Positions 16,138 through 62,006 of a stretch of DNA of 64,000 nt are shown piece after piece. Each line of letters starts with the position of its first letter. The stretch's first letter is position 1. The position numbers and the translations under genes were made by a program. The notes under the pieces were generated by a model. It was not told the origin of the DNA. It did no database searches and saw nothing but the letters and a program-made list of their open reading frames with translations. Location: positions 186,001 to 250,000 of the IMG/VR virus record IMGVR_UViG_3300021137_000001, one strand, 5' to 3'.

Positions 16138-16809
16138 ATGCGAATACAAGATTTTAATCCAGTAATTAAAGAAGATAACGAAATGTCCGATGTTGTTACA
16201 GCACACGGGCTAGTGGGCAAATCATTGCATAATCCTACTGCACGTCAAGAATACTTTGATTATATGACACACTTGCGCAACAAGCATGGTAAAGAATATA
16301 GCACACGTGTACATCAAAAAGCAACGGCACTTGCTAAACCAGTAGAAGAAACAATTGTAAAAGTGGGCAGTCAATATGAACTTAAATCACACACTGGTAA
16401 GAACTTGGGCAAGTACCCAACTCGAGCTGGTGCTGAGAAACGTGAACAACAGGTTAATTATTTTAAGCACGTTAAAGAAGATGCGTGGACTGGTGATAAT
16501 CCAGCATGGAACAATGGCACAGATCAATGGCATAGTGCAGATGATGGATCTGGCGGTGGAGTTAGTGGTGGTGCGCCAGCAGCTCCATTAACTGGGGCAT
16601 TACCAATTGAAGAAGATTTTAATCCACAAGATGTTGTTAGTGTTGATGTTCCACTATTAATACGTTTACTTGAATATGCTCGTGAAGATGCAAAAACAGA
16701 CATGGATTTACATAATGTAACAGAACGTTTAATTGCCTTAAGTCAAGAAGGCAATACACTAACAATGCAAGATTATGACACAATTTGCAACACCAAGGAA
16801 ACTGATTAA
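16138..16809 (+). CDS. Modular hypothetical protein, putative head-internal
   Basis: Leader MRIQDF..IKE|D; junctions VEE|T, VKE|D, IEE|D; ATAAATA at 16103. Confidence 0.7.
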   Translation: MRIQDFNPVIKEDNEMSDVVTAHGLVGKSLHNPTARQEYFDYMTHLRNKHGKEYSTRVHQKATALAKPVEETIVKVGSQYELKSHTGKNLGKYPTRAGAEKREQQVNYFKHVKEDAWTGDNPAWNNGTDQWHSADDGSGGGVSGGAPAAPLTGALPIEEDFNPQDVVSVDVPLLIRLLEYAREDAKTDMDLHNVTERLIALSQEGNTLTMQDYDTICNTKETD

Positions 16810-19142
16810 TGGCATCATTACTGTATACATATATTATTAATACATCAGGACCGCGAGCATTTACTATGCCCGATGGTTTTAAAGATACCGCAGTACTTCA
16901 TTTATGGGGTGCAGGCGGTGGAGCAGGTTCAAATGCCGTAGGCGGTGGCGGTGGTTATTCCAGAACAACAGTAACAATACAAAAAGGTGACATAGTCGAA
17001 CTTGGAGTCGGCTTACCAGGTAGTCCAGCAACTGGAAACACTCCCGGCACAGGTGGCGGCAGTTCAATCGGTCTACGTTATAGTGGAGGTCCTGGAGGTC
17101 CCGGTAGTACAATATCTGGCGATGATAATATCGGCGGAGCAGGTGGTGGTGGTGGCGGCGCAACTGTTGTTATGGTTAATGGCATTGCGGTCGGAGTTGC
17201 CGGCGGCGGAGGCGGTGGGGGCGGTGGAAGTGGTTACCAAACAGGTGCGGCTGGATTGGCCGGTGGAGTATACACTGCATTAACATTAAACACACAAGGC
17301 GGTGCTGGCGCTGCTGCGTATGCAGCTGGAGGCGGTGGTGGTGGTGGCTATTTTGGCGGCGCAGCTGGTGCAGGCAAAGGTGACGATGTTGGTGGTGGCA
17401 ATGGCGGGTCTGGCGGTGAAAATTACGGCACAATTGCTATTATAGGGTCGGGAACAATTAGTGGTGGCGTAGGACAAACTTACGCACCAACAGCAAACTT
17501 TGGACACGCTGGTTACGGCGGTTATGCAGTAATTGAGTTTACCCGTAAATTCCAAATATACACAAAAGATTCAGGTACATGGCATCAAATATTAAATGCG
17601 TGGGTTAAAACACCTGCACATCAAATTCCAGCCACAATAGTACATCAACCAGAAACAGTATCATTTACTACTAATTCAACTTTTACAGTACCGGCCGGAG
17701 TAACTGCACTTACTGTAACTGCTATCGGTGGTGGAGGTGGTGGTGGAGGTGCAGATGGTAATGCAAGTGGCGGATATTACTATGATGAAGCCGGTGTATT
17801 AAAAGGTGGCTACCCGGGTGAGAAAGTGTCAGGTACTATCGCAGTCGCCCCTGGCCAAATATATACAATAACTCCGGGTAATGGTGGTGAAGGTGGACAA
17901 GGTAGAGCTAGTAGTGCAGTCGGTGGTGCAGCAGGTACTGGTTATTTTCCGGGTGGTAGAGGCGGATATGCTGGTGCATCAGGATCATCGGGAGCAGGTG
18001 GTGGCGGTGGCGCAGCAACAGTAATATTACTTGCTGGCAATCCGTTATTAGTAGCCGGTGGTGGCGGAGGCGCTGGTGGATCAGGCAATGGTGCCTATGG
18101 TGTTGCTACAATCGGTACATATACATCTGGAACAACTGGTGCACAAGGACAAGACAAATCAGGCGATGGTGGTGGAGGCGGTGGCGGAGGTGGCGGTCAC
18201 ACACAAGGCGGTTCTGGTGGACCAACACGTGGTGGCGACAGTGGCGGATATTCAGGTCAAACTGGTAAATCATTAGCACCATCAGGAACAACAGTAGGTG
18301 TTGGAACTAACGGTGGTTTATATGCAAGTGGCAACGGTGGACGTGGATCTGTCACTGTAACATACACATTACCAACTGAATATATTACTATTGCAGACGG
18401 TGGCTGGAAAGAAATTGAACAAGTATATGAAAAATATAACGGTGTATGGAATCCAGTATTAAGCATAGAAACAGTAAATGATAAACGTGGTGCACGTTAT
18501 ACTACACCTGGTACGTATGTATGGGTATGCCCTAGTGACATTGTTAGAGTTAAAGCAATGGTATACGGTGCTGGTGGTTCAGGTACTGGGGGTGCTGGTG
18601 GAGCAGGTGGATTTACAACTGATTATACAACAGTAACTCCAGGTGCGCATTATGCAGTGGTAGTCGGTGCTGGTGCAGAACCAACAGGCTCGGCAGCTGG
18701 TCAAGATAGTAGTTTTAATGTAACAGTAGTTGCCCATGGTGGAGCACACGGCGCGGCACAATCAGCTGGAACAGATGCTGGTGGTGCAGGTGGTATATCA
18801 GCAGGTGGAGATATAAATCTAACTGGGGTGGCTGGTACAGCAGGAAACGCTCTTTATTCATACTACTACTATTGGTGGGGTGGCTGGAATAGCTACTACG
18901 GTTGGGGAGGTTATAACTATTATAACTACAATGGTATCGGTAATTACGCCAACGGGTATTATGGCTATAATTATAACTACGGTTATAACAACTATGGTTG
19001 GGGCGGATGGTATGGCTGGGGATGGCCGTACTCTTATCAATCTGGTTATAACTATGGTACGCCAGGAGTTGGTTATGATGGAATCGGTGGTGGGGCAGTT
19101 ACTACTACAGGCGCACCGGGTGCAGTACTTATTGTGTACTAG
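16809..19142 (+). CDS. Glycine-rich virion, tail-fibre or adhesin-like protein
   Basis: Three Gly-rich domains each opening with a xGxGG poly-Gly run; Tyr/Trp/Asn/Gly-rich C-terminal insert. Confidence 0.7.
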   Translation: MASLLYTYIINTSGPRAFTMPDGFKDTAVLHLWGAGGGAGSNAVGGGGGYSRTTVTIQKGDIVELGVGLPGSPATGNTPGTGGGSSIGLRYSGGPGGPGSTISGDDNIGGAGGGGGGATVVMVNGIAVGVAGGGGGGGGGSGYQTGAAGLAGGVYTALTLNTQGGAGAAAYAAGGGGGGGYFGGAAGAGKGDDVGGGNGGSGGENYGTIAIIGSGTISGGVGQTYAPTANFGHAGYGGYAVIEFTRKFQIYTKDSGTWHQILNAWVKTPAHQIPATIVHQPETVSFTTNSTFTVPAGVTALTVTAIGGGGGGGGADGNASGGYYYDEAGVLKGGYPGEKVSGTIAVAPGQIYTITPGNGGEGGQGRASSAVGGAAGTGYFPGGRGGYAGASGSSGAGGGGGAATVILLAGNPLLVAGGGGGAGGSGNGAYGVATIGTYTSGTTGAQGQDKSGDGGGGGGGGGGHTQGGSGGPTRGGDSGGYSGQTGKSLAPSGTTVGVGTNGGLYASGNGGRGSVTVTYTLPTEYITIADGGWKEIEQVYEKYNGVWNPVLSIETVNDKRGARYTTPGTYVWVCPSDIVRVKAMVYGAGGSGTGGAGGAGGFTTDYTTVTPGAHYAVVVGAGAEPTGSAAGQDSSFNVTVVAHGGAHGAAQSAGTDAGGAGGISAGGDINLTGVAGTAGNALYSYYYYWWGGWNSYYGWGGYNYYNYNGIGNYANGYYGYNYNYGYNNYGWGGWYGWGWPYSYQSGYNYGTPGVGYDGIGGGAVTTTGAPGAVLIVY

Positions 19143-23878: not shown

Positions 23879-24816
23879 GAGCAAGAGAATTTATCTTAGA
23901 GGGTGGATGGGCAAGTACTTTAACACAAGGTACACACATTACACCTGCGTTAGTTGATGTTGTAGTACAATCAATGCCTGCGTTACAACAAGCACTAAAT
24001 GCCTTCTTAAAAACTAAAGACCTGGCACCTGTTAAGATTGGCACACCTGTTGGTAGTACAACATACTACAAGAGAGATCTTGCGCAAAATCCAACTCGTG
24101 AGTACGGCGATATTGATGTTAACTTCTTTGTGCCTCGTTTACCCAATATGTCAGACAATGCAAATGAACAAACATACAGTGCCGCAATTAAAGAGTTTTG
24201 CGATAGTAATCCAAACTATTCAACTAACAACGGTACGAATGTTATAATTAGAGTGGGCGATCAATATGTACAAGTTGACTTTGTTACTTCGTACTATGAA
24301 AATGAACAGTGGAGTCGTGCATTAGGTCCAGAATACAATGTCAAGGGTGTACTAAGCGCAAGTTTATATTCATCATTGGCAGAAGCATTAAATCTTAGTT
24401 TTGGCGGACGTGGTGTACAAGTTAAATTACAAAATGGCGTTCCGGTTAGTTTTAGACAAACTAAAGATACAGAGCTTAAAACCGTAACAAACAATCCCGA
24501 CACTTGGGCAATTGATATTGCTAAGTTTCTTGGCGCAAAAACTATTAGTCCACGTTTAGCCAAATATCCGGGCATGGGCGACGAAATAAAGACACTAAAC
24601 ACTATTAACAGTATTGTTGGCATTGCCGAAAGTTTAAACAAACCTGAGTTAATAGAACAGGTGAAAGCAATCTACATAAGTAAAATAAGCAAGGCAGTTA
24701 ATAGTAGTAAGTTTGACAAGGCGGCTACTCCAGAAGCAATTAAAAAAGCCGAAGATACTAAAGCATTATTGACTAGAGAAGCACAACGTATATTAGGACA
24801 GTTCGATGCGATTTAA
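23875..24816 (+). CDS. Pol-beta superfamily nucleotidyltransferase-like protein
   Basis: VGST...YGDIDV, VQVDFV; leader MRAREFILE|GG. Confidence 0.7.
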   Translation: MRAREFILEGGWASTLTQGTHITPALVDVVVQSMPALQQALNAFLKTKDLAPVKIGTPVGSTTYYKRDLAQNPTREYGDIDVNFFVPRLPNMSDNANEQTYSAAIKEFCDSNPNYSTNNGTNVIIRVGDQYVQVDFVTSYYENEQWSRALGPEYNVKGVLSASLYSSLAEALNLSFGGRGVQVKLQNGVPVSFRQTKDTELKTVTNNPDTWAIDIAKFLGAKTISPRLAKYPGMGDEIKTLNTINSIVGIAESLNKPELIEQVKAIYISKISKAVNSSKFDKAATPEAIKKAEDTKALLTREAQRILGQFDAI

Positions 24817-25320
24817 AGAGATATTAAACGAAGTTACAGTGTGTTGGGATGGGATATCAATATCATCAATGAGCGATAAACTGAAATTTTTTGAACAATA
24901 TTGCTCAAAAAAGTCATATCTTAGAGAATCAATTGATACATCCGATGTAGAAATATTTGAATCATTATCACATTATGCCACATCTCCTGTTGTAAATAAT
25001 TGGTATATCGGTGCGTTATTAATGTTATTAGAGAATAATAATGTTATTCCATTCAATGACGCACAAATTTTAAAATACACAGGCACAAGTACAGGAGCAG
25101 ACGGTATTATCATTATACATTTTCTTAAAGAAGATGGTACCAAAGGAACATGGCCGGATTCGGTCCTCTCAGAGAAAAGTTATTATAAATCATTTCTATT
25201 CGATTCAACCGCACAGTATGATATATTTAGATCAGCAGTAGCATTAAGATATAGTAAACCATTGCCAAAAATTGAGTCGGACAAATTAGGAAAGCAAGAT
25301 GCGATTTAAAGAGATATTAA
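24792..25320 (+). repeat. Direct repeat covering SD, start and leader codons (24792-24827 and 25285-25320)
   Basis: Identical 23-mer GATGCGATTTAAAGAGATATTAA at 24805 and 25298, each preceded by ATTAGGAxAG. Confidence 0.9.
24806..25309 (+). CDS. Hypothetical protein, paralog of 22590-23045
   Basis: Leader MRFKEILNE|V; FLFD..QYDIFRSAVALRYSKPLP. Confidence 0.75.
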   Translation: MRFKEILNEVTVCWDGISISSMSDKLKFFEQYCSKKSYLRESIDTSDVEIFESLSHYATSPVVNNWYIGALLMLLENNNVIPFNDAQILKYTGTSTGADGIIIIHFLKEDGTKGTWPDSVLSEKSYYKSFLFDSTAQYDIFRSAVALRYSKPLPKIESDKLGKQDAI

Positions 25321-26633
25321 GAGAGTATAGTAGAGAGAAAACTGCTAACGTGTTTGGCAAGAAACTTATTGCGGCACTACTAGCAGAAAAGGGATTGAAC
25401 TATGGTGGAGCGGGGTTTCATCAAATCTTATCTGACATTAGATTTAGAATACAACAAAAGTTAAAGATTGGCTCACCGCTTGATGCCGAACAAGAAGACT
25501 TAACTGCTAAACAAATACTACACGCCATCGAACAAGGCGATCCAACACCAAATAAAGAGTATGTACAGTGGCTGGCAAAATGCTATGCAAATGAAGGCGT
25601 AAAGCTGGAAGATATCGTCAGTAAAGGGGCAGATTGGCTCAAAACTTACGCTCAATTGAAGGTTAAACGTCTACTACCACCAAATGTCACAAACATAATG
25701 AATTTGAAGTTTGCACAGTTGCCAGACGTTGTATTCGACGAAGAGCTTGTTAGCAAACTACAAGCGGCGGAAGATAAGACAGCAGACAAAGGTAAGGCAA
25801 CTACAGTATTTGAGAATGGCGCAGTACGTATTATTGTACCACAAGATGAAACTTCAGCTTGCTACTATGGACAAGGTACACGTTGGTGTACTGCGGCACG
25901 TGCAAACAATATGTATGATAACTATGCTCGTGATGGCGACTTATATATAATGTTGCCAAAACAACCTAAGTATGATGGCGAGAAGTATCAATTGCATTTT
26001 GCTAGTGGACAGTTCATGGACGAGGGTGATAGTCCAGTGAGTGATATGATTGCGTTATTAACTGGTCGCTTTGGCGATGATGTCATGACGTTTTTCTTTA
26101 ATAAAGAGCCAATGATTAAACAATGGATTGTAGTTACTCCAGCAGAAATATTACAACCATTAATAGATCAAATTGCTGACATCGCTAGCGACTACATAAA
26201 CGATAAAATAAGTGATTGGGAAATGGAAGATGACTATTACTACAACGAGCTACGTGAAAAGGGCTATGTTGACGAAGATGGTGATGTTGACTGGACCAGA
26301 GTTGAAAAAGATGGCATGTCTTGGTTAGAAACTAATGATGAGGCGCAGGAATGGCTTAGTAGAGCACAAGATGCTGTTAGACCAAGTATTGATAGATTAC
26401 GCGATGCGGCACAAGAGTGGGCTGAAGACAATGGTGAGGAATGTACGCTACATCAGTTAGATAGTTTAGTGGCCAGTATTGTTATAGAAGAATTTACATC
26501 ACGTCGTGGCAATACTGAAGATGGTGGGCTATCTGAGTGGATGGAAAAACATATTCAAATACGTGCATCAACTCCATCACAACAAGCTGCGGGCGAGCCG
26601 CAGTGGAAAGCTGAATATACTAAAGGGCAATAA
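25299..26633 (+). CDS. Hypothetical protein with CxYGxxTxWCT domain, paralog of 23048-23878
   Basis: Leader MRFKEILRE|Y; IIVP..SACYYGQGTRWCTA; acidic C-terminus. Confidence 0.75.
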   Translation: MRFKEILREYSREKTANVFGKKLIAALLAEKGLNYGGAGFHQILSDIRFRIQQKLKIGSPLDAEQEDLTAKQILHAIEQGDPTPNKEYVQWLAKCYANEGVKLEDIVSKGADWLKTYAQLKVKRLLPPNVTNIMNLKFAQLPDVVFDEELVSKLQAAEDKTADKGKATTVFENGAVRIIVPQDETSACYYGQGTRWCTAARANNMYDNYARDGDLYIMLPKQPKYDGEKYQLHFASGQFMDEGDSPVSDMIALLTGRFGDDVMTFFFNKEPMIKQWIVVTPAEILQPLIDQIADIASDYINDKISDWEMEDDYYYNELREKGYVDEDGDVDWTRVEKDGMSWLETNDEAQEWLSRAQDAVRPSIDRLRDAAQEWAEDNGEECTLHQLDSLVASIVIEEFTSRRGNTEDGGLSEWMEKHIQIRASTPSQQAAGEPQWKAEYTKGQ

Positions 26634-27742
26634 TGAAATTATCAGACGTACATCGTAAAACAAACAGAGTTGACTGTACATTTGACGGCAGTTGGACAGC
26701 ACCATCTACGATTGTAGTTAAAGCAGTGCTTAAACAAGAACACAAAGATTGGACTAACGAGTGGGAAAAAGAAGTTATGCGTGGAGAAGCATTATTAAAT
26801 GTTTCATCACATACACTTTATGTTAGTCGCATCGACGCTCGACCATCGGGACAAGGCTTCGGTGGTGAAATGCTTAAATGTATTATTGAACATGCACGTG
26901 CGCATAAGATTCCCCGTATTGAAACATACGTTGAAAACAACAATGCTGATTCACGTAACTTATTTAGAAAAGCGGGCTTTGAAGAAATGCCCGGAACAGA
27001 TGGCGGAAGATGGCGTCTGGACTTAACAACTAACGAAGCACGTATACCTAAAGATGTTGTAAAGAATAATGTTGCTTATCACAATGAACTTAATCCAGCG
27101 GCATGGGATGGTGATCATTTAAATCCAGAAGTAAAAGATCGTTTACTAGAAATTGCTGAACGTTTTGTTAGTTATTTAGAAATCCCAGACTTTAAAGTAT
27201 TAGACATTGTACTAACTGGTAGTATGTCTAACTATAACTGGACTAAGTTTAGTGACTTTGACCTACACGTAATTACAAATTATAGTGATTTAAAATGCGA
27301 TAACATTGTAGCAGAGTTTTATCACGCTAAGAAAAAGATATGGAATGATGATCACGATATTACTATCTATGGTTATGATACTGAGTTGTATGTTGAAGAT
27401 TCTAAAAACCCACCAGTTAGTGAAGGTGTGTATAGTATACTAAATGACGAATGGGTTAAGACTCCTACATATAGTCCGCCAAGTATTAACAACAATGCTG
27501 TTAATGCCAAGGTTAGAGATTTAATTAATCAAATCGATACTGCTATTAGTACAGCAGATGACCCAGCAGACATTAAACGTATATCAGACAAACTTGCTAA
27601 AATGCGCAGAGCAGGCTTAGATGAAGCCGGTGAGTTTAGTACAGAGAACTTGGCGTTTAAAATATTACGTAACATGAAATACATTGATAGATTACACAAA
27701 GCATATCATCAGCAACAAGATGATGAACTTAGTTTGAAATAA
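26633..27742 (+). CDS. GNAT acetyltransferase fused to a nucleotidyltransferase
   Basis: SGQGFGGEML, NADSRNLFRKAGF (GNAT); LTGSMSNYNW..SDFDLH (NTase); junction TNE|A. Confidence 0.8.
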   Translation: MKLSDVHRKTNRVDCTFDGSWTAPSTIVVKAVLKQEHKDWTNEWEKEVMRGEALLNVSSHTLYVSRIDARPSGQGFGGEMLKCIIEHARAHKIPRIETYVENNNADSRNLFRKAGFEEMPGTDGGRWRLDLTTNEARIPKDVVKNNVAYHNELNPAAWDGDHLNPEVKDRLLEIAERFVSYLEIPDFKVLDIVLTGSMSNYNWTKFSDFDLHVITNYSDLKCDNIVAEFYHAKKKIWNDDHDITIYGYDTELYVEDSKNPPVSEGVYSILNDEWVKTPTYSPPSINNNAVNAKVRDLINQIDTAISTADDPADIKRISDKLAKMRRAGLDEAGEFSTENLAFKILRNMKYIDRLHKAYHQQQDDELSLK

Positions 27743-27747
27743 AATTA

Positions 27748-27834
27748 TCACCTTAGGACCGGTAATTCGTTACCGCAGGTGGGGCGGCTACTGCCCTGGG
27801 GAAACAATTCGCTACTGCGTACCCTAAAAGTAGC
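27748..27834 (+). ncRNA. Candidate structured ncRNA with rRNA-complementary segments
   Basis: GC-rich island in an AT-rich intergenic gap; CACCU/AGGUG stem, CGGUAA-UUCG-UUACCG hairpin, GGGC/GCCC hairpin, possible GCUACU/AGUAGC pseudoknot. Confidence 0.65.
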
Positions 27835-27849
27835 AACTTGATTTCTGTA

Positions 27850-27856
27850 ATAAATA
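27850..27856 (+). promoter_or_regulatory. T4-late-like (T)ATAAATA promoter motif, representative copy
   Basis: ATAAATA sits shortly upstream of starts at 2238, 9441, 12480, 16103, 19155, 20482, 27850, 55928 and 57429, and on the minus strand before all five endonuclease genes. Confidence 0.65.
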
Positions 27857-27877
27857 CACTATAATAAGAGAATCCTG

Positions 27878-30800
27878 ATGCGCTTTAAAGAAATCAAAAA
27901 ACTATTTGAAACTACACAACTTGATGAAGTTTCAATGAGTCCAACTAACTTACAAAAATTCCTTAATAGTCCAGAAGCTATTGGTATGTTAATTGGTATC
28001 GAGTTTGAAATGGCTGTGCCTAATGTAGACGGTAGCGATGATGAAGATTCGAACTACGAGCCAGATTATAGTTACAATGAAAGCTGTACTGACATTAGCG
28101 AGATTGTAAACTTCTTTCAGCATGGTGACTTTGCTAGCATGGGCCGAAGTGATGCAAATCGTGTACGTGATGATTTGTTTGAAGAATATATGAATTGGTC
28201 GTATGATGCCGCAGAAGATTATGTAAACGATCACGATGATGACTTAACCAGTAACATCCGTAGTCGCTTATTTGACAATGAAGTTGATCGTGATGATACC
28301 GCAGAAGAAGCACACACACGCTGGGTAGAGGAAAATCCAGACGGCGACACAGCATCAGAAGAAGCCAGCGAAGAAATACGTAATCTAACATTGCAAATGA
28401 TGGAAGATAAATTAGATGCTATGATGGAAGATATTGAAAGTAGTGAATATCAAAATGCGTACGATGAAGCAAAACAAGAAATGGAATATGACTTTCGTAA
28501 TAGTGGCGACGGAGACATGGAAGCATGGCTAAGTGATATAGGCGTCAACGATATGCAAGATGCTGCTGGACAATGGGGACTTGATTGGCCGCACATGGAA
28601 GACACTAACTATAACAATGGTGGTGCTTCTATAGAAACTGTAGCAGACGAGTTTGCCGAATGGATGGGATTAAGTAATGTAAACAGTTCAAGTAAATATC
28701 ACGGTGCTAGAAGAGATGGCAAATCTTGGTGTATTGAACCGGATGGCAGTATCGATCACGATGAAAACGAAGCTGGGTTAGAGTTTATTAGTCCACCACT
28801 ACCATTGAAAGATGGCTTAGAGCAAATGACTAAAATCATTGCGTGGGCAAATGATAAAGGTTGTAGAACTAATAGTTCAACTGGTCTACACATGAACATT
28901 AGTGTGCCTGATTATAATTTCGACCATTTAGACTTTGTTAAACTTGCATTGTTTATGGGCGATGAACATATATTAGAACAGTTTGGCCGTACTTACAATA
29001 ATTTTTGTAAGAGTGCGTTAAAAATTGTTAAAGAAAAAATTGATAAAGAAGGTGTTGCTGGGCCATTACTACAAGCAATGCGTGACCATTTGAACGTTGC
29101 CGCAAGTAAAGCAGTACACAATGGTACAACACAAAAGTATACAAGTATCAACACACAAACTGGTTATGTGGAATTTCGCGGCCCGGGTGGTGATTATTTA
29201 AATCAAGACATTACGCAACTAATTTCAACAGCATTACGTTTAGCACAAAGTTTACGTATAGCTACAGATCCGTTAGCACATAAACAAGAGTATGCTAAAA
29301 AATTATACAAACTTGTAGTACCAACCGATAAAGATACAGACGATGATAACAGTGTTGCTATGTTTACTCGTTATGCAATGGGTCAGATTAAGAAAGATGA
29401 CTTGTTAAACAGTTTACGTCAGGCGCAATCAACTCGTAAAGCTAAAAAATTCCCACATGGTCCGAAACGTGAATGGACAGTTGTACGTAAGAGCAATCCA
29501 GGATACAAAGTATCATTCAACGCATCATCTGCAGCAGAAGCATTACAGTTAGCTAAGAATCAAATTGGTGGTTGGCAAGGTGTAGCAGATGAACACTTTA
29601 AAGTAACAGCAGATGCTAGTGGTGATTCTGCATACAATAAAGCAAGAGAGGAACATTATCTATCTACAATGAATCCGGTGTGGCAGAAGTTTATTCGTGA
29701 TATCGCAACTATAGATACTGATAGATTGAAAAAACGAAAAGCTGAATTTGAAACGAAATCTGAAAGTACACCGTTAGAAGAGTGGGAAAAAATAGCACTT
29801 ACTAAAATCAATAATGAATTAGCAACACGTAAAGACGATGTTGCAGCTACTGGTGCAATAGATGATTTAGAAGAATTACCACAACAACATCGCGAGTATG
29901 CGCAAGATATACAAAATAAATCAGAAGATACATTAAACCGTATTAAAGCCGAGATAGAAGCTGGCGACTTTAGAAATGCGTTAACAAACATACAAGCATC
30001 AATTTTCCTCGGCGTTGTTGTAAATGAACTTGCTCGTCGTGCTGGATTAACTGCTGATATGGCTGACTTAGATGGCTTTGTTAATACGCTTGGACAAACA
30101 AGCACGTGGCAGTTGTATAATCCTGCAACAGACGAAGTATTAGCTACATACACTGGATTAACACAAGGGCAAGCAATAGACAGACGTTCAGCAATGCGTT
30201 CGAATCAAGGCAATGAAAATATTGAAATGCGCAACTTAGGTAGTGCAGAACAATCAACAGCGCAAGCCAATGCTACTCCCTCAACACTATGGGATAACTG
30301 GATACGTACACTTCCAACTAGAAATACAGACTCTATTAATAGCTTTAGAGATCAAATACGTGGCGGTGAGCACAATAATACATTGCCATCAGAACATGAA
30401 AGAGATGTTGTTATTATTGCTATTGATGATGAACTACGTAGCAGAATGGCACGAGGCGAAGGTTCGGGCACAAGAACTTATACAATATACGATGGTACAG
30501 GCAGAATTGTAAATACTATTCGCTCAACATCAGTGGCAAGGGCATTAGATGACTTTGGTGAGAATAATGATATCGATACAACTCATTACACCGCTCGCGA
30601 ACTTGGAGTTACATATAATAATTATGGCGATGCGCAAGCGGCTGCGGATACACAAAATTCAGCACAACGTCTGGGACCGGGTCAATCAACATACAGTGTT
30701 GAACATATTCCAACCGGACAAGTTACTAGTCAGATAGGCAACGATGCTGCAGATGCTATACAACGTGTTGCTAGACTAACTGGCAGCACTCCTAATAATT

Positions 30801-31075
30801 TTAGAATTGCACAAGCAGCACCAGCCAACAACTTAAAACGATATAGAGTGGGCAATCATACATACGGTCGTGAAATTATACATGCAGCAAATCGTGAAGA
30901 AGCTATTCGTTTGTTTGCTTTCAACAATAACATATCAGTTGATGACGTTACTTCGGGACCGAGCTTTGTAGCAGATTTAGTAGATGACGAACAGTCACAA
31001 GATGCAGCCGCACAGTTAGCAACTCAAGTAGCAGAATCACTCAACCGTATGCGTAAACTAGCAGGGCTGAAGTAA
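27878..31075 (+). CDS. Putative amidoligase (COOH-NH2 ligase type 2) with long C-terminal extension
   Basis: IGIEFE, IEPDGSI, LEFISPP, TNSSTGLHMNIS, KYTSIN, VEFRGPGG; leader MRFKEIKKLFE..LDE|V; ends ESLNRMRKLAGLK. Confidence 0.8.
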   Translation: MRFKEIKKLFETTQLDEVSMSPTNLQKFLNSPEAIGMLIGIEFEMAVPNVDGSDDEDSNYEPDYSYNESCTDISEIVNFFQHGDFASMGRSDANRVRDDLFEEYMNWSYDAAEDYVNDHDDDLTSNIRSRLFDNEVDRDDTAEEAHTRWVEENPDGDTASEEASEEIRNLTLQMMEDKLDAMMEDIESSEYQNAYDEAKQEMEYDFRNSGDGDMEAWLSDIGVNDMQDAAGQWGLDWPHMEDTNYNNGGASIETVADEFAEWMGLSNVNSSSKYHGARRDGKSWCIEPDGSIDHDENEAGLEFISPPLPLKDGLEQMTKIIAWANDKGCRTNSSTGLHMNISVPDYNFDHLDFVKLALFMGDEHILEQFGRTYNNFCKSALKIVKEKIDKEGVAGPLLQAMRDHLNVAASKAVHNGTTQKYTSINTQTGYVEFRGPGGDYLNQDITQLISTALRLAQSLRIATDPLAHKQEYAKKLYKLVVPTDKDTDDDNSVAMFTRYAMGQIKKDDLLNSLRQAQSTRKAKKFPHGPKREWTVVRKSNPGYKVSFNASSAAEALQLAKNQIGGWQGVADEHFKVTADASGDSAYNKAREEHYLSTMNPVWQKFIRDIATIDTDRLKKRKAEFETKSESTPLEEWEKIALTKINNELATRKDDVAATGAIDDLEELPQQHREYAQDIQNKSEDTLNRIKAEIEAGDFRNALTNIQASIFLGVVVNELARRAGLTADMADLDGFVNTLGQTSTWQLYNPATDEVLATYTGLTQGQAIDRRSAMRSNQGNENIEMRNLGSAEQSTAQANATPSTLWDNWIRTLPTRNTDSINSFRDQIRGGEHNNTLPSEHERDVVIIAIDDELRSRMARGEGSGTRTYTIYDGTGRIVNTIRSTSVARALDDFGENNDIDTTHYTARELGVTYNNYGDAQAAADTQNSAQRLGPGQSTYSVEHIPTGQVTSQIGNDAADAIQRVARLTGSTPNNFRIAQAAPANNLKRYRVGNHTYGREIIHAANREEAIRLFAFNNNISVDDVTSGPSFVADLVDDEQSQDAAAQLATQVAESLNRMRKLAGLK

Positions 31076-32528: not shown

Positions 32529-32786
32529 ATGGCATTAATGTTTTCAGCTGAGCAAAAGGCAAAACTTATTCAAATCGTTAACGAAGGCGTACAAGTACTA
32601 CAAGAAGTAGAAGATTTAAGTGCTGGCCTTAGTGACACAATTAAAGCAGTGGCAGAAGAATTAGAAATCAAACCGGGCTTACTTAAAAAAGCAATTAAGA
32701 TTGCACAAAAATCTAAATTTGGTGAAACAAATGAAGATCACGAAACTGTTACTGACATTTTAGAAACTGTTGGTCGTACACTATAA
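32529..32786 (+). CDS. T4 DsbA-like dsDNA-binding protein
   Basis: 85 aa helical protein, ..DTIKAVAEELEIKPGLLKKAIKIA.. pattern; close to the polymerase gene. Confidence 0.6.
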   Translation: MALMFSAEQKAKLIQIVNEGVQVLQEVEDLSAGLSDTIKAVAEELEIKPGLLKKAIKIAQKSKFGETNEDHETVTDILETVGRTL

Positions 32787-33076
32787 TGAAAGCAAATTGG
32801 CACAAAACTGTTAAGTTTATTCAGGACGATTGGTATAGCCACCCTGGCAGATTGTGTATAGAAACAGTTAATTGGGTACTGAATATTGTAATTGCTTCGG
32901 CGGTTTCATTTACAGTGCCTGATACTAATTGGTTGATAGTATATCCGTTATTTTTTACTGCGTTAGGCATTAGTATATATTCTGCTATTAGTCGAGGCAG
33001 TTTCGGCATACTAATAACAAGTATAACTATATTGTTAATCGATATAGTAGGATATATACGAATAATAATGTTATAA
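32786..33076 (+). CDS. Small membrane protein
   Basis: Three hydrophobic segments. Confidence 0.7.
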   Translation: MKANWHKTVKFIQDDWYSHPGRLCIETVNWVLNIVIASAVSFTVPDTNWLIVYPLFFTALGISIYSAISRGSFGILITSITILLIDIVGYIRIIML

Positions 33077-33143
33077 TAAAGAATCGTACACTTTACGTAC
33101 AAGTACAAGGTTAACCGGCCATAAGCGGTAAAAGGAGTTTCAA

Positions 33144-35834
33144 ATTTCATACGTCGACGCATTATTCGATAGAGCAAAAGATCGCATCTATGTCGTAGAA
33201 AGAAAAGAAGGCATACGTGAGTATGTCGAGTATCCAGCAAATTATGTTATGTACACAGATGATCCAAAAGGCAAGTATCGCACAGTATATGACACACCTG
33301 TAAGTCGTTTTAGCACTCGCATTGGTAAGGAATTCCATAAAGAAACGCGAGTCAATTCAAATAAGAAGATATGGGAAAGCGATATCAATCCTGTATTCCG
33401 TTGTTTATCAGACAACTATCTCGGAGCAACATCCCCTAAGTTACAAACTGCGTTTTGGGATATTGAAACAGACTTTGACCCAGCACGTGGATATGCGCCA
33501 ACTAGCGACCCGTTTAATCCTATTACTGCTATTTCAGTATACTTGGATTGGCTAGACAAGATGGTTACACTTGTTATTCCACCTAAGAGCTATTCATGGG
33601 AAACTGCACAAGAGATTTGTGACCAGTATGAGAACTGCTTTTTGTTTGAGCGTGAAGCAGATATGCTGGATACGTTTCTTAATTTAATCGATGATGCAGA
33701 CGTATTAAGTGGATGGAACAGTGAGGGTTATGATATTCCATACACAGTTGGACGTATTGTACGTGTATTAAGCAAAGATGACACACGACGTCTTTGTCTA
33801 TGGGGTCAGTATCCAAAACAGCGTGAATTTGAACGTTTTGGTGCCACAAGTGTCACCTTTGACCTCATTGGACGTGTCCATTTAGACTACATGCAGTTAT
33901 ACCGCAAATACACATACGAAGAACGACATAGCTATGCGTTAGATGCAATTGGCGAGTATGAGTTAGATGAGCGTAAAGTTGCATACGAAGGTACATTAGA
34001 TCAATTGTATAACAAAGACTTTCCAAAGTTTATTGATTACAACAGACAAGATACTATGTTGCTGGCTAAGTTAGATAAGAAGTTACGCTTCTTAGATTTA
34101 GCTAACGAACTTGCGCATGATAATACTGTATTGCTGCAAACAACAATGGGCGCGGTAGCAGTTACCGAGCAAGCTATCATTAACGAAGCACATCAACAAG
34201 GTCTGATTGTTCCAAATCGCAAGGGCAGAGATGACATGGGCGATACGCAAGCGGCTGGTGCGTATGTCGCAACTCCAAAAGCAGGCATGCATGATTGGAT
34301 TGGGTCAGTCGATATTAACTCACTGTATCCAAGTGCAATTCGTGCGCTTAACATGGGACCAGAATCAATCATTGGACAGATTCGTCCAATTATGACAGAC
34401 CATTATATTACTGAGAAAATGGCAGACAAAATAGTTAATGGCAAAAAATCTAAAGGCTCAAGTTTTGCAGATGCGTGGGACGGACTATTTGCTACATTAG
34501 AATACACCGCAGTCATGGAAGGTAAGACAGGTATTGAGCTTACTATCGATTGGGAAAGCTCAGGCGAGAGTACTGTACACACTGCGGCAGAAGTATGGAC
34601 CTTAATCTTTGATAGTAATCAACCGTGGATACTTAGTGCAAACGGTACTATCTTTAGTTTTGAGAAAGAAGCAGTTATCCCAGGTTTGCTAAAACGTTGG
34701 TATGCTGAACGTAAAGAACTACAGGCTAAAATGCGTTCATGTACAGATCCGGAAGAGATTGCATTTTGGGATAAGCGTCAGTTAGTTAAGAAGATTAACT
34801 TGAACAGTTTGTATGGTGCCTTACTTAATCCGGGCTGTCGTTTCTTTGATAAGCGTATCGGACAGAGTACTACCTTAACAGGCAGAACTATTGCTAAACA
34901 TATGGATGCGTATATTAACGAATGTATTACTGGCACGTACGATCACGTTGGTGATGCAATTATTTACGGTGATACCGACTCATGTTACTTTAGTGCATGG
35001 CCATTAATTAAAGATGAAGTCGAATCCGGTAAGATGGAATGGAGTCCCGAGATTGCAATTCAATTGTATGATGGTATCTCAGACCAAGTTAACGAAAGTT
35101 TTCCAGCAATGATGGAACGTGCATTTCACGTGCCACGCAATATGGGTAATGTAATTAAAGGTGGGCGTGAACTTGTTGCAAGTAAAGGACTATTCATTAA
35201 GAAGAAACGTTATGCTGTATTAATTACAGACTTAGATGGTAAACGTTTAGATACACACGGCAAGCCCGGCAAAGTTAAAGCAATGGGCTTAGACTTAAAA
35301 CGTTCAGATACTCCGAAGATTGTACAAGACTTCTTAAGTGACATCTTACTCGATGTGCTAACAGGTGTAGATAAGACAGATATTATTGATAAGGTGCGTG
35401 AGTTTAAAATTGCATTCCAAGATAGACCTGCATGGGAGAAAGGTACGCCGAAACGTGTAAACAATCTTACTAACTACACAGCGGCTGAAGTTAGAGAAGG
35501 TAGAGCTAATATGCCCGGGCATGTACGTGCGGCAATGAACTGGAATAACTTAAAGCGTATGCATGGTGATAACTATTCAATTAACATTGTTGATGGTATG
35601 AAAACTATTGTGTGTAAACTTAAAGATAATCCAATCGGGTTTACTAGTGTGGGCTATCCAACAGATGGGACACATATTCCGCAATGGTTTAAAGATTTGC
35701 CGTTTGATAATGACTTAATGGAGTCAACAATTGTTAATCAGAAAGTAGAGAACTTATTAGGTGTGCTTAACTGGGATATTGCCGGAAGCACAGACATTAA
35801 GACTACATTTGATGCATTGTTTAGTTTTGACTAA
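33144..35834 (+). CDS. Family B DNA polymerase (gp43-like), probable ATT start
   Basis: ExoI WDIETD, DINSLYPS, KINLNSLYG, YGDTDS, KKRYA; frame open to ATT 33144, which is 6 nt after AAGGAG; the track starts at ATG 33249. Confidence 0.93.
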   Translation: MSYVDALFDRAKDRIYVVERKEGIREYVEYPANYVMYTDDPKGKYRTVYDTPVSRFSTRIGKEFHKETRVNSNKKIWESDINPVFRCLSDNYLGATSPKLQTAFWDIETDFDPARGYAPTSDPFNPITAISVYLDWLDKMVTLVIPPKSYSWETAQEICDQYENCFLFEREADMLDTFLNLIDDADVLSGWNSEGYDIPYTVGRIVRVLSKDDTRRLCLWGQYPKQREFERFGATSVTFDLIGRVHLDYMQLYRKYTYEERHSYALDAIGEYELDERKVAYEGTLDQLYNKDFPKFIDYNRQDTMLLAKLDKKLRFLDLANELAHDNTVLLQTTMGAVAVTEQAIINEAHQQGLIVPNRKGRDDMGDTQAAGAYVATPKAGMHDWIGSVDINSLYPSAIRALNMGPESIIGQIRPIMTDHYITEKMADKIVNGKKSKGSSFADAWDGLFATLEYTAVMEGKTGIELTIDWESSGESTVHTAAEVWTLIFDSNQPWILSANGTIFSFEKEAVIPGLLKRWYAERKELQAKMRSCTDPEEIAFWDKRQLVKKINLNSLYGALLNPGCRFFDKRIGQSTTLTGRTIAKHMDAYINECITGTYDHVGDAIIYGDTDSCYFSAWPLIKDEVESGKMEWSPEIAIQLYDGISDQVNESFPAMMERAFHVPRNMGNVIKGGRELVASKGLFIKKKRYAVLITDLDGKRLDTHGKPGKVKAMGLDLKRSDTPKIVQDFLSDILLDVLTGVDKTDIIDKVREFKIAFQDRPAWEKGTPKRVNNLTNYTAAEVREGRANMPGHVRAAMNWNNLKRMHGDNYSINIVDGMKTIVCKLKDNPIGFTSVGYPTDGTHIPQWFKDLPFDNDLMESTIVNQKVENLLGVLNWDIAGSTDIKTTFDALFSFD

Positions 35835-51413: not shown

Positions 51414-51480
51414 GCTGACATAGTTCCTTTATGTTAGAGTAGTTGGATGTTGTCGCATCGCGAACTACACTTCTATTTAT
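51411..51480 (-). promoter_or_regulatory. Conserved 5' leader element of GIY-YIG genes, copy 1
   Basis: ATAAATA, then GUAGUU-CGC-GAUG-N6-CAUC-C-AACUAC hairpin, then SD/AUG hairpin. Confidence 0.8.
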
Positions 51481-51555
51481 CCAAAATACTAGTTGACTTA
51501 ACCATAGTAATGTGCTATTATATACTATAATTAAGTGTTAAGGAAGTAATAAATC

Positions 51556-54015: not shown

Positions 54016-54080
54016 ATAACCCTCCCAGGTTGTTTAGAGTAGTTGGATATTTCCGTATCGCGAACTACACTATTATTTAT
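54013..54080 (-). promoter_or_regulatory. Conserved 5' leader element of GIY-YIG genes, copy 2
   Basis: ATAAATA, then GUAGUU-CGC-GAUA-N6-UAUC-C-AACUAC hairpin. Confidence 0.8.
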
Positions 54081-54151
54081 CAAAAATACTTGCTCTTCTT
54101 CTTTTTTTCGTATATACTAACAGTTAAATCAACTAATAAAGGACATCAAAT

Positions 54152-58612: not shown

Positions 58613-58619
58613 ACAGTAC

Positions 58620-58648
58620 TTGACAAGAACATAGTTTGGTAGTATAAT
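58620..58648 (+). promoter_or_regulatory. Consensus sigma70 promoter
   Basis: TTGACA-N17-TATAAT. Confidence 0.85.
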
Positions 58649-58690
58649 ATGTTTTGTTACGTTAAGTTAATAATTAATTAGGAGTTACAA

Positions 58691-60477: not shown

Positions 60478-60535
60478 AGTCCTTTATGTTAGAGTAGTCG
60501 GATAGTGAGATATCGTGGACTACACTTCTATTTAT
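60466..60535 (-). promoter_or_regulatory. Conserved 5' leader element of GIY-YIG genes, copy 3
   Basis: ATAAATA, then GUAGUC-CAC-GAUA-N6-UAUC-C-GACUAC hairpin, then ACAUA-AAGGAC-UAUGU hairpin. Confidence 0.8.
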
Positions 60536-60546
60536 CATTTCTCCAA

Positions 60547-61937: not shown

Positions 61938-61946
61938 ATTCTCCGC

Positions 61947-61975
61947 TTGACAACGACAGAAAATGGTAGTATAAT
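61947..61975 (+). promoter_or_regulatory. Consensus sigma70 promoter
   Basis: TTGACA-N17-TATAAT. Confidence 0.85.
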
Positions 61976-62006
61976 AGTCTTTATAGTAAACGATTAGGAG
62001 CAGGCA

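What the first reader, a model, noticed from the sequence alone, without database searches (positions are those of the whole stretch)
27748..27834. Structured intergenic RNA with segments antisense to the ribosome's functional core (23S H69-H71, 16S 530 loop)
Seen: an ~87-nt GC-rich island folds by eye into P1 CACCU/AGGUG enclosing UAGGAC and a CGGUAA-UUCG-UUACCG hairpin, then GGGC/GCCC with loop GGCUACU, a weaker GGG/CCC arm holding UUCGCUAC, and a 3' AGUAGC able to pair with either GCUACU. The UUCG loop and G-U pairs favour the + strand. Established (rRNA sequence and E. coli numbering from memory): 23S 1920-1937 is CGGUCCUAAGGUAGCGAA, part of the I-CeuI site; 16S 515-533 is GUGCCAGCAGCCGCGGUAA. 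Matches: ACCTTAGGACCG (27750-61) is a 12/12 complement of 23S 1920-1931; TTCGCTAC (27808-15) is 8/8 to the adjoining 1930-1937; GCGGCTACTG (27784-93) is 9/10 to 16S 519-528; TTACCGC (27770-76) is 7/7 to 16S 527-533. Four matches to two decoding-centre or bridge elements in under 90 nt, centred largely on predicted loops, look unlikely by chance. Inference: a phage RNA that binds rRNA (ribosome hijack, assembly block, or guide for neighbouring enzymes), or an rRNA decoy if read from the minus strand.
Basis: partly seen in the sequence, partly recalled or inferred. Interest (0 to 1): 0.9.

Follow-up and report, generated by a model that had tools for sequence, protein, structure and literature searches.

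The report
Phage small RNA antisense to 23S rRNA
The GC-rich island is one copy of a previously undescribed, widespread, single-copy structured RNA of uncultured jumbo phages. Its conserved loops are complementary to helices 69-70 of the large-subunit ribosomal RNA, which suggests, but does not prove, that a phage RNA base-pairs with the ribosome's own RNA.

Summary
The island (window 27742-27835, + strand) is real and not an isolated oddity. It belongs to an RNA family found once per contig in more than 200 IMG/VR phage contigs. The family is absent from Rfam 15, from cultured phages and from bacterial genomes.

Covariation supports three hairpins plus a pseudoknot between the P3 loop and the 3' tail. 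The element is non-coding and lies on the gene strand. It starts at the stop codon of the upstream ORF and sits upstream of a conserved module of an 87-aa protein and a family-B DNA polymerase. A short subfamily has its own late-type promoter and terminator, so it is a free-standing small-RNA gene.

The two 16S matches are incidental. One lies in a covarying stem; the other lies in the loop that forms the intramolecular pseudoknot.

The 23S matches fall on the two conserved unpaired blocks, which together cover 23S 1920-1937. In many members the match runs on through H69. A separate subfamily replaces the second loop with a 9-mer antisense to 23S 1968-1976, the opposite strand of H70.

Best reading, about 45%: a phage small RNA that pairs with 23S H69-H70. 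The function itself is untested.

The parts
27742..27835 (+). Whole RNA element, about 94 nt. It is the only copy in the 64-kb window.
   Evidence: Covariance model R1 scores 80.3 bits, E = 1.7e-18; the next best hit in the window scores 12.6 bits.
27740..27742 (+). TAA stop codon of the upstream ORF (26633-27742, a GNAT plus nucleotidyltransferase-like protein). The element starts directly after it.
   Evidence: Across the family the stop ends between -6 and +17 nt from CCTTAGG in about 90% of members that have a clear upstream ORF.
27749..27753 (+). P1 5' strand, CACCU. It pairs with 27777-27781.
   Evidence: Direct reading. In the family, 65% of members form a contiguous helix of 5 bp or more, against 38% when the 3' strands are swapped between members.
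27751..27761 (+). Block A, CCUUAGGACCG. It is the conserved junction or loop of hairpin 1 and is antisense to 23S 1920-1930.
   Evidence: Kept exactly in 100 of 114 unique members retrieved without constraining this block; the variants are CCCUAGGACC, CCUUAGGGCC, CCUUGGGACC and (A/U)CUUAGGACC.
27760..27775 (+). P2 hairpin, CGGUAA-UUCG-UUACCG. It is the counterpart of the antisense of H69.
   Evidence: Five covarying pairs, 93% paired. It is optional: 'minimal' members lack it. Similarity to the H69 antisense is shown.
27777..27781 (+). P1 3' strand, AGGUG. It abuts P3.
27782..27796 (+). P3 hairpin: GGGC / GGCUACU / GCCC.
   Evidence: Four pairs, all with double changes, 99% paired.
27787..27792 (+). 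P3 loop GCUACU, the 5' strand of the pseudoknot.
   Evidence: Pairs with 27829-27834. The loop and tail variants covary.
27798..27824 (+). P4 hairpin: outer GGG/CCC, inner CA/UG, loop AUUCGCUAC.
   Evidence: The inner stem covaries. The outer stem varies in geometry between members.
27807..27815 (+). Block B, AUUCGCUAC, the P4 loop. UUCGCUAC is antisense to 23S 1930-1937.
   Evidence: Present in 69 of 114 members retrieved without constraining it. The others keep only (N)NCGCUAC or carry a different loop, including ACGCCAUUC, which is antisense to 23S 1968-1976.
27829..27834 (+). 3' tail AGUAGC, the 3' strand of the pseudoknot.
27838..27865 (+). Sigma-70-like promoter, TTGATT-16-TATAAT, for the next gene (amidoligase, 27878-31075). 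It marks the 3' boundary of the element.
   Evidence: 10 of 12 matches. Promoter-like sequences follow the element in most family members.
32541..35597 (+). Context, not part of the RNA: the conserved downstream module of an 87-aa protein (32541-32783) and a family-B DNA polymerase (33144-35597).
   Evidence: Found downstream on the same strand in 116 and 132 of 195 loci respectively. Located in the window by tblastn.

Best explanation
The island encodes a small structured RNA of about 95 nt, read from the + strand and present once per genome in a clade of uncultured jumbo phages related to the Rak2/Atu_ph07-like group.

Its scaffold has three hairpins. P1 encloses block A, with or without P2. 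P3 and P4 follow. A pseudoknot between the P3 loop and the 3' tail locks the fold. The scaffold displays two conserved single-stranded blocks: CCUUAGGACC(G) in hairpin 1 and AUUCGCUAC in the P4 loop.

In most phages the RNA is made as the 3' end of the transcript of the preceding gene. In a short subfamily it is made from its own late-type promoter and ends at a terminator whose loop is block B.

Inferred mechanism: the two blocks act as a split guide that base-pairs side by side with 23S rRNA nucleotides 1920-1937, that is the 3' strand of H69, the linker, and the 5' strand and loop of H70. In many members the hairpin-1 sequence continues the pairing into H69. These helices are closed in the mature 50S subunit, so the likely substrate is nascent or late-assembly pre-50S, or free 50S. 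The outcome would be interference with or reprogramming of large-subunit maturation or subunit joining during infection.

Shown: the family, the fold, the strand, the copy number, the synteny and the complementarity. Inferred: binding to rRNA and its consequence.
For: Family and fold:
- More than 200 distinct members, each from a different contig.
- Covariation in P2, P3, P4 and the pseudoknot.
- Not coding: no frame is open in more than 18% of members, and length mod 3 is evenly spread.

Single copy: one hit in the 64-kb window and one hit in each of 91 loci, never two.

Small-RNA-like organisation: in the short subfamily (L035, L131, L135) GATAAATA lies 16-17 nt upstream, and P4 is a GC-rich stem followed by U5-7 with block B as its loop.

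Complementarity to 23S:
- Block A is 11/11 and block B is 8/8 to adjacent 23S segments, 1920-1930 and 1930-1937. My estimate of the chance of an 11-mer match anywhere in the rRNAs together with an abutting 8-mer is about 1e-6 to 1e-7.
- When each block was left free in the search, A stayed exact in 88% of members and B in 61%. B variants change only at the end of the helix away from the junction and keep CGCUAC.
- An independent subfamily of 18 unique members from 26 contigs has covarying P4 stems and an invariant loop ACGCCAUUC, antisense to 23S 1968-1976. That segment is the strand that pairs with 1933-1941 to form H70 (fold of the 23S fragment). Two different loops therefore address the two strands of the same rRNA helix.
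- In that subfamily the sequence after block A reads CCUUAGGACCGUUA...UUACGG, which follows the antisense of 23S 1908-1930. L216 matches 17 nt without interruption.

The E. coli target sequence is identical to the one used for the comparison. This region is among the most conserved in bacterial 23S rRNA (established knowledge).
Against: - No experiment or transcript data exist. No natural trans-acting antisense RNA against bacterial rRNA is known, so the prior is low.
- H69 and H70 are base-paired and buried at the subunit interface in mature ribosomes.
- About 39% of members retrieved without constraining B lack the exact 8-mer. Some P4 loops (AGUCGUG, CCGGGAAU) have at most a 6-7-nt match to 23S.
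- The P2 stem covaries away from the H69 antisense in several subfamilies. In a 7-mer histogram the H69 peak is no higher than chance peaks elsewhere in 23S.
- The variants of block A do not show a significant excess of wobble-preserving changes: 3 of 5 types.
- In one subfamily CCUUAGG is paired in cis with CCUAAGG.
- The benefit to the phage of attacking the 50S subunits it depends on is unclear.
- Conserved blocks would stay complementary to rRNA even if the element merely descended from a captured antisense rDNA fragment.
Confidence: 0.45

Rival explanations
1. Exapted antisense-rDNA relic. The element descends from a captured and rearranged antisense fragment of a 23S gene. It now works through something other than rRNA pairing, for example as a protein-binding RNA, or as a cis-acting 3'-end, stability, processing or insulator element between the upstream genes and the replication module. 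The conserved blocks remain complementary to rRNA only because both sequences are conserved.
For: - It starts at the stop codon and is followed by promoters, so it sits at a boundary between transcription units.
- At the homologous position a relative (L003) has an ordinary hairpin plus U-run terminator.
- In the short subfamily P4 is itself a terminator.
- The hairpin-1 sequence is colinear with the H69 antisense.
Against: - It is single copy per genome, which is unlike a generic terminator or insulator.
- Block B and the alternative loop ACGCCAUUC are permuted relative to the antisense strand. They correspond to two different rRNA segments, which would need separate captures or rearrangements.
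- The window copy has no terminator-like feature.
- The upstream genes differ between phages, so it is not an operator for one particular gene.
Confidence: 0.2
2. The rRNA complementarity is coincidental. The element is an orphan structured RNA of another kind, such as a self-cleaving ribozyme, a ligand-binding RNA, or an RNA that dimerises through the quasi-palindromic CCUUAGG and GGACC loop. The conserved loops would then serve tertiary contacts.
For: - Conserved unpaired nucleotides plus a pseudoknot are typical of ribozymes and riboswitches.
- CCUUAGG can self-pair in 6 of 7 positions.
- 8-mer matches to rRNA are common: 16 matches of 8 nt or more in the island against a mean of 9.7 in shuffles, including AGGACCGG in the same sense as the sarcin-ricin loop.
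Against: - The joint probability of the abutting 11-mer and 8-mer is very low.
- Independent extensions into H69, and the loop matching the opposite strand of H70, point to the same rRNA region.
- No Rfam ribozyme or riboswitch model matches 14 representative copies, even at E up to 5-10.
Confidence: 0.12
3. The functional transcript is the minus strand. It would be a mimic or decoy of H69-H70 that titrates a factor or a toxin acting on that part of 23S rRNA.
For: On the minus strand the element reads ...GUAGCGAAU...CCGUAA..UAACGGUCCUAAGG, that is an H70-loop-like hairpin and an H69-like hairpin. Toxins and enzymes that act on H69 and H70 are known; this is from memory and serves only as a lead.
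Against: - G-U to A-C is 122:24, and the pseudoknot would carry a C-A mismatch in 71 of 91 members.
- All flanking genes are on the + strand.
- The late-promoter and terminator signals of the short subfamily are on the + strand.
- The alternative loop ACGCCAUUC would not fit a simple mimic.
Confidence: 0.06
4. A DNA-level or replication function. The element would be part of an origin of replication or a primer-RNA locus at the head of the replication module.
For: It is single copy and in conserved synteny upstream of the 87-aa DNA-binding-like protein and the DNA polymerase. Promoters lie adjacent to it.
Against: - Compensatory changes with G-U pairs and a pseudoknot point to a folded RNA.
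- Several kb of variable cargo genes separate it from the polymerase in many phages, 4.7 kb in the window.
- Cultured relatives with the same module lack it.
Confidence: 0.05

Closest known systems
Eukaryotic pre-rRNA chaperone snoRNAs (U3, snR30/U17), which pair with pre-rRNA through split guide elements
   Same: A structured small RNA presents two short conserved single-stranded elements that pair with neighbouring rRNA segments and would keep a helix from forming. The likely substrate is a ribosome assembly intermediate.
   Different: The window copy has no C/D or H/ACA box motifs. The element is phage-encoded and acts in a bacterial host. The guide topology is 'crossed': the 5' block pairs with the 5' part of the target. 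No protein partners are known and the function is not shown.
Bacterial and phage trans-acting small RNAs, including small RNAs derived from 3' UTRs
   Same: It is about 75-95 nt, lies at the 3' end of an ORF or has its own promoter and terminator, and carries invariant exposed 'seed' blocks on a covarying scaffold.
   Different: The conserved complementarity is to rRNA, not to an mRNA, and no convincing target was found in the window. It has a pseudoknot. Most members lack a U-tract terminator. Dependence on Hfq or ProQ is unknown.
Viral RNA elements that engage ribosomal RNA or ribosomal subunits next to a stop codon (calicivirus TURBS, plant-virus 3' translation enhancers such as the BTE and the tRNA-shaped TSS)
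   Same: It is a virus-encoded structured RNA placed beside the end of an ORF. It has several hairpins plus a pseudoknot and complementarity to rRNA.
   Different: Those elements are eukaryotic, engage 18S rRNA or the 60S subunit, and promote reinitiation or cap-independent translation. Here a promoter usually separates the element from the next gene, and the target would be 23S H69-H70.
EBS1/EBS2 of group II introns
   Same: The same crossed bipartite topology: two loops of one RNA pair with adjacent segments of one target strand.
   Different: There are no intron domains, no reverse transcriptase and no splice sites. The whole element is only about 95 nt.
phi29 pRNA
   Same: A single-copy structured phage RNA with loop-to-strand pairing that is supported by covariation.
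   Different: There is no Rfam match. The genomic context is different and there is no link to the packaging genes. The pairing here is most simply intramolecular.

Membership tests
Any Rfam 15 family (4227 models, including riboswitches, small ribozymes and known phage RNAs) | Covariance-model score at or above the family's gathering threshold | tested here: not met
   No hit in the whole window at gathering thresholds. Nothing on the element at E up to 10. Nothing on the element in 13 representative loci at E up to 5.
tRNA / tmRNA | Cloverleaf or tRNA-like domain recognised by ARAGORN | tested here: not met
   No tRNA or tmRNA genes in the window.
Intrinsic (Rho-independent) terminator | GC-rich hairpin followed directly by a U-tract | tested here: not met
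   None in window 27300-28100. Only the short subfamily (L035, L131, L135) has a GC stem of about 10 bp plus U5-7, read directly. The scanner misses it because the loop is 9 nt.
Dispersed repeat / mobile regulatory cassette (REP, MITE or PeSL type) | Many copies per genome | tested here: not met
   One copy in 64 kb. One copy per locus in 91 loci. Every locus comes from a different contig, including contigs of 300-350 kb.
Small protein-coding gene | A conserved open reading frame, with insertions and deletions in multiples of three | tested here: not met
   The best frame is open in 16 of 91 members. Length mod 3 is 28/34/29.
Trans-acting small RNA (functional class) | Conserved single-stranded seed on a structured scaffold | tested here: met
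   Blocks A and B lie in loops or junctions and are near-invariant while the stems covary.
Trans-acting small RNA (functional class) | Discrete transcript with its own ends (promoter or processing site, and terminator) | tested here: inconclusive
   Promoter-like GATAAATA plus a terminator appear only in the short subfamily. Most copies directly follow an ORF. No expression data are available.
Trans-acting small RNA (functional class) | Demonstrated pairing with a target RNA | not testable with these tools
   Only complementarity to 23S 1908-1937 and 1968-1976 can be shown.
Box C/D or H/ACA guide RNA | C (RUGAUGA) and D (CUGA) boxes, or H (ANANNA) and ACA boxes flanking a guide pocket | tested here: not met
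   There is no UGAUGA or CUGA in the window copy (direct reading). The architecture is different.
Small self-cleaving ribozymes (hammerhead, twister, twister-sister, pistol, hatchet, HDV-like) | Family-specific conserved core and fold; self-cleavage | tested here: not met
   No Rfam model matches. Catalysis itself cannot be tested here.

The most novel reading that the evidence does not exclude
A clade of jumbo phages encodes a dedicated small RNA that base-pairs with host 23S rRNA at H69-H70, the intersubunit bridge B2a region next to the decoding centre. It would be a natural, snoRNA-like or antisense regulator of bacterial ribosome assembly or subunit joining, and the first trans-acting RNA known to target bacterial rRNA.
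Probability: 0.4. Interest if true: 0.95.

Novelty: categorically new. Interest (0 to 1): 0.82.

Why it matters
If the pairing is real, this would be a new way for a virus to act on the translation machinery: an RNA directed against rRNA itself, rather than a protein that modifies ribosomal proteins or factors. It would be the first bacterial-world counterpart of snoRNA-like pre-rRNA pairing. It would also be a naturally evolved antisense design against H69-H70, a site already explored for synthetic antibacterials.

Even if the rRNA link proves to be historical, the result stands as a well-supported new RNA family. The family has more than 200 members, a pseudoknotted three-hairpin fold, one copy per genome and a fixed genomic position in an uncultured jumbo-phage lineage. 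It is short enough for direct biochemical and structural study. The hypothesis can be tested in ordinary laboratory E. coli, because the 23S target sequence there is identical.

Tried and rejected
- Single-sequence folding is uninformative: z = -0.7 on both strands.
- Rfam gave nothing on the element, at gathering thresholds or at permissive E-values, in the window or in 13 loci. ARAGORN found nothing.
- blastn of the island and of a typical family member against 50,697 cultured phage records found no homologue.
- A covariance-model search of the DNA-polymerase neighbourhoods of Phosso, Atu_ph07 and Vibrio phage 2.275.O found nothing. The GAP32 locus was fetched but not searched, because the request exceeded the size limit.
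- A scan of bacterial genomes gave only two hits. One (L238) carries a phage-type family-B DNA polymerase; the other (L237) was not examined further. Both sit on contigs binned into Bacteroidota MAGs.
- The coding hypothesis arose because the window copy and L022 share an open frame with a 3-nt indel. It is rejected.
- The readthrough or frameshift-stimulator idea is rejected. The distance from the stop codon to the motif takes all three phases.
- The generic terminator or repeat idea is rejected by copy number.
- The operator idea, for either the upstream or the immediately downstream gene, is rejected because the neighbours vary.
- A search for mRNA-type targets of blocks A and B in the window found only weak G-U-rich sites for A and one isolated 9-mer for B.
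- RNAduplex of the whole motif against rRNA windows gave meaningless long duplexes that did not differ from shuffles.
- A 7-mer histogram of the P2 region over 23S showed an H69 peak no higher than chance peaks. The H69 extension therefore rests on contiguity with block A and on the ACGCCAUUC subfamily.
- Literature searches for the sequences and for the concept found nothing relevant. The catalogue of more than 10,000 candidate viral structured RNAs (PMC10690425) may contain the motif, but its supplements are not held, so this could not be checked.

Full report
**What is at the coordinates.** The window is part of IMGVR_UViG_3300021137_000001, a 329-kb phage contig. The island lies in the 135-nt gap between a GNAT plus nucleotidyltransferase-like ORF (26633-27742) and an amidoligase ORF (27878-31075), both on the + strand. 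On its own the sequence is unremarkable. Its fold is no more stable than shuffles on either strand. A 12-mer or longer match to some rRNA in either sense occurs in 3.9% of shuffles. About 15 other places in the window carry 12- to 15-mer rRNA matches. Rfam and ARAGORN find nothing.

**It is a member of a large family.**
- Almost all hits share one architecture.
- Two further scans, each leaving one of the two blocks unconstrained, and a fourth scan for a variant loop brought the total to about 205 distinct copies.
- Every copy comes from a different contig, ranging from 4 kb to 353 kb.
- No cultured phage has the element.
- Among 185,579 species genomes only two contigs match, both binned into Bacteroidota MAGs. 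One of them (L238) carries a phage-type family-B DNA polymerase; the other was not examined further.

**Structure.** MAFFT plus RNAalifold already showed strong covariation in P3 and P4. I built a covariance model from 28 members. It finds exactly one copy in the window (27742-27835, 80 bits; next best 12.6 bits). It also finds one copy in each of 91 loci and never two.

On that alignment I counted P2, P3, the inner P4 stem and the pseudoknot between the P3 loop and the 3' tail.

| Measure | Observed | Control |
|---|---|---|
| Cells paired | 92.3% | 72.2% in shuffles; at most 41% when partners are slid |
| Pairs with double changes | 17 of 19 | 11.6 (shuffle mean) |
| Double-change cells | 317 | 100 in shuffles |

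- The pseudoknot is shown by loop and tail pairs that change together: GGCUGCU with AGUGAGC, GGGUGCU with AGUGACC, GGCUACU with AGUAGC (the window), GGCCACU with AGUGUGGC, GUUCUCCCUG with CAGGGAGA, and UGCCCCCA with UGGGGG.
- P1 slides by a few nucleotides between subfamilies but is supported. 65% of members have a contiguous helix of 5 bp or more, against 38% with swapped partners.
- P2 is optional. Minimal members have CCUUAGGAC as the loop of a simple hairpin.
- G-U pairs outnumber A-C pairs 122:24, or 51:24 without the one conserved pseudoknot G-U. This, together with the gene orientation, places the RNA on the + strand.
- It is not coding.
The ambiguous 3' AGUAGC pairs with the P3 loop.

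**Genomic setting.**
- In about 90% of members with a clear upstream ORF, the element begins within a few nucleotides of that ORF's stop codon. In 26% the UAG inside CCUUAGG is the stop codon.
- It is followed within 5-60 nt by sigma-70-like or T4-late-like promoter sequences. In the window this is TTGATT-16-TATAAT at 27838-27865.
- The immediate neighbours vary. Further downstream on the same strand, 116 and 132 of 195 loci carry a conserved 87-aa protein (phrog_12534/639) and a family-B DNA polymerase.
- The window has these at 32541-32783 and 33144-35597.
- The polymerase places the lineage near the Rak2/GAP32/Atu_ph07-like jumbo phages. The three of those cultured phages that were searched lack the RNA.
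- A short subfamily (L035, L131, L135) has GATAAATA 16-17 nt upstream, a plain tetraloop hairpin in place of P3, and a P4 formed by a GC stem followed by U5-7, with block B as the loop. That is a free-standing small-RNA gene.

**The rRNA complementarity, part by part.**

*16S.*
- TTACCG(C) is the 3' strand of P2, which covaries (UUGCG, CUGUG and others).
- The P3 loop, which in the family consensus is an 8/8 complement of 16S 519-526, changes together with the tail in about a quarter of members.
- These matches are best explained by intramolecular constraints and chance. An 8-mer match to some rRNA has a probability of about 0.1.

*23S.*
- Blocks A and B are the conserved unpaired blocks of the family. 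They are antisense to abutting segments, 1920-1930 and 1930-1937.
- Left unconstrained, A stays exact in 100 of 114 members and B in 69 of 114.
- Twelve further members keep CGCUAC and vary only at the end away from the junction.
- A distinct subfamily of 18 unique copies from 26 contigs has highly covarying P4 stems and an invariant loop ACGCCAUUC, antisense to 23S 1968-1976.
- Folding the 23S fragment 1905-1982 shows that 1968-1976 is the strand that pairs with 1933-1941 to form H70. The two loop types therefore address the two strands of one rRNA helix.
- In the same subfamily the sequence after block A (CCUUAGGACCGUUA...UUACGG) follows the antisense of H69. L216 matches 17 nt without interruption.

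*Caveats.*
- Two other loop classes have at most 6-7-nt matches.
- The H69 similarity of P2 is not outstanding in a 7-mer histogram.
- One subfamily pairs CCUUAGG in cis with CCUAAGG.
- The E. coli sequence was used as a proxy for unknown hosts. One phage carries a beta-proteobacterial-type tmRNA.

**Interpretation.** The existence, fold, strand, copy number and synteny of a new RNA family are shown. A real relation to 23S H69-H70 is very likely. Whether it reflects function (pairing) or history (a captured antisense rDNA piece) cannot be settled here. I favour pairing for two reasons. Block B and the alternative loop are permuted relative to the antisense strand. They also correspond to two different rRNA strands of the same helix. 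Selection for a target explains that more easily than descent does. The two blocks would bind side by side on the target. P1 and P4 would leave the junction at G1930/U1931, and the roughly 47-nt scaffold would span the two helices. H69 and H70 are closed in mature 50S and belong to the last parts of domain IV to fold (established knowledge). The plausible substrate is therefore nascent or late pre-50S, or free 50S. The consequence for the phage is unknown. The rivals are listed with their weights in the Rival explanations section.

**Novelty.** No Rfam family, no cultured-phage homologue and no paper found describes the element. It may be an unnamed entry in the catalogue of PMC10690425, which could not be checked. 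No natural trans-acting RNA directed against bacterial rRNA is known to me; that statement rests on memory.

Noticed in passing
window 24806-25309, 25299-26633, 27878-31075; related loci (cluster 0): Many proteins of this phage lineage, 64-1499 aa long, share an N-terminal module that starts MRFKEI... or MRAxEF.... It is fused to different enzyme domains, including an amidoligase and a deaminase-like HAE..PCxxC domain. The 36-nt repeat D12 marks two of the starts in the window.
   Followed up: partly
window 51434-51490, 54034-54090, 60489-60545; 58619-58649 and 61946-61976: A 57-nt repeat with an internal hairpin occurs three times. Two near-identical promoter-like repeats, CTTGACAA...TAGTATAATA, are also present. 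These are probably regulatory cassettes.
   Followed up: no
window ~16500-18800: A long gene region is full of GGTGGTGG-type glycine-rich repeats (families D1-D3).
   Followed up: no
L067:1884-2294: A phage contig that carries the motif also encodes a two-piece (permuted) tmRNA of the beta-proteobacterial type (RF01850 at 118 bits, RF04321 at 130 bits). This hints at the host range.
   Followed up: no
L035, L131, L135 (e.g. L135:7105-7215): A short subfamily of the RNA lacks the pseudoknot. It has a T4-late-like GATAAATA upstream, and its P4 hairpin doubles as an intrinsic terminator.
   Followed up: partly
family-wide; e.g. L026, L038, L041, L045: In about a quarter of members the UAG inside the conserved CCUUAGG is used as the stop codon of the upstream ORF, so ribosomes terminate inside hairpin 1.
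   Followed up: partly
window 26633-27742 versus L003-L021: The upstream ORF is a fusion. Residues of about 60-118 match GNAT acetyltransferases, and residues of about 146-368 match phrog_36119 with a nucleotidyltransferase motif. Most relatives match only residues of about 120-369 and so may lack the GNAT part. In several of them a variant copy of the RNA lies 2-3 kb downstream rather than adjacent.
   Followed up: partly
L239, L240, L241, L242 (Phosso, Atu_ph07, Vibrio phage 2.275.O, GAP32): Cultured jumbo-phage relatives keep a small ORF of about 85-100 aa directly upstream of the DNA polymerase; Phosso has a further 85-aa ORF just upstream annotated 'DNA binding protein'. The three of these that were searched (Phosso, Atu_ph07, Vibrio phage 2.275.O) have no copy of the RNA within 12 kb.
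   Followed up: yes
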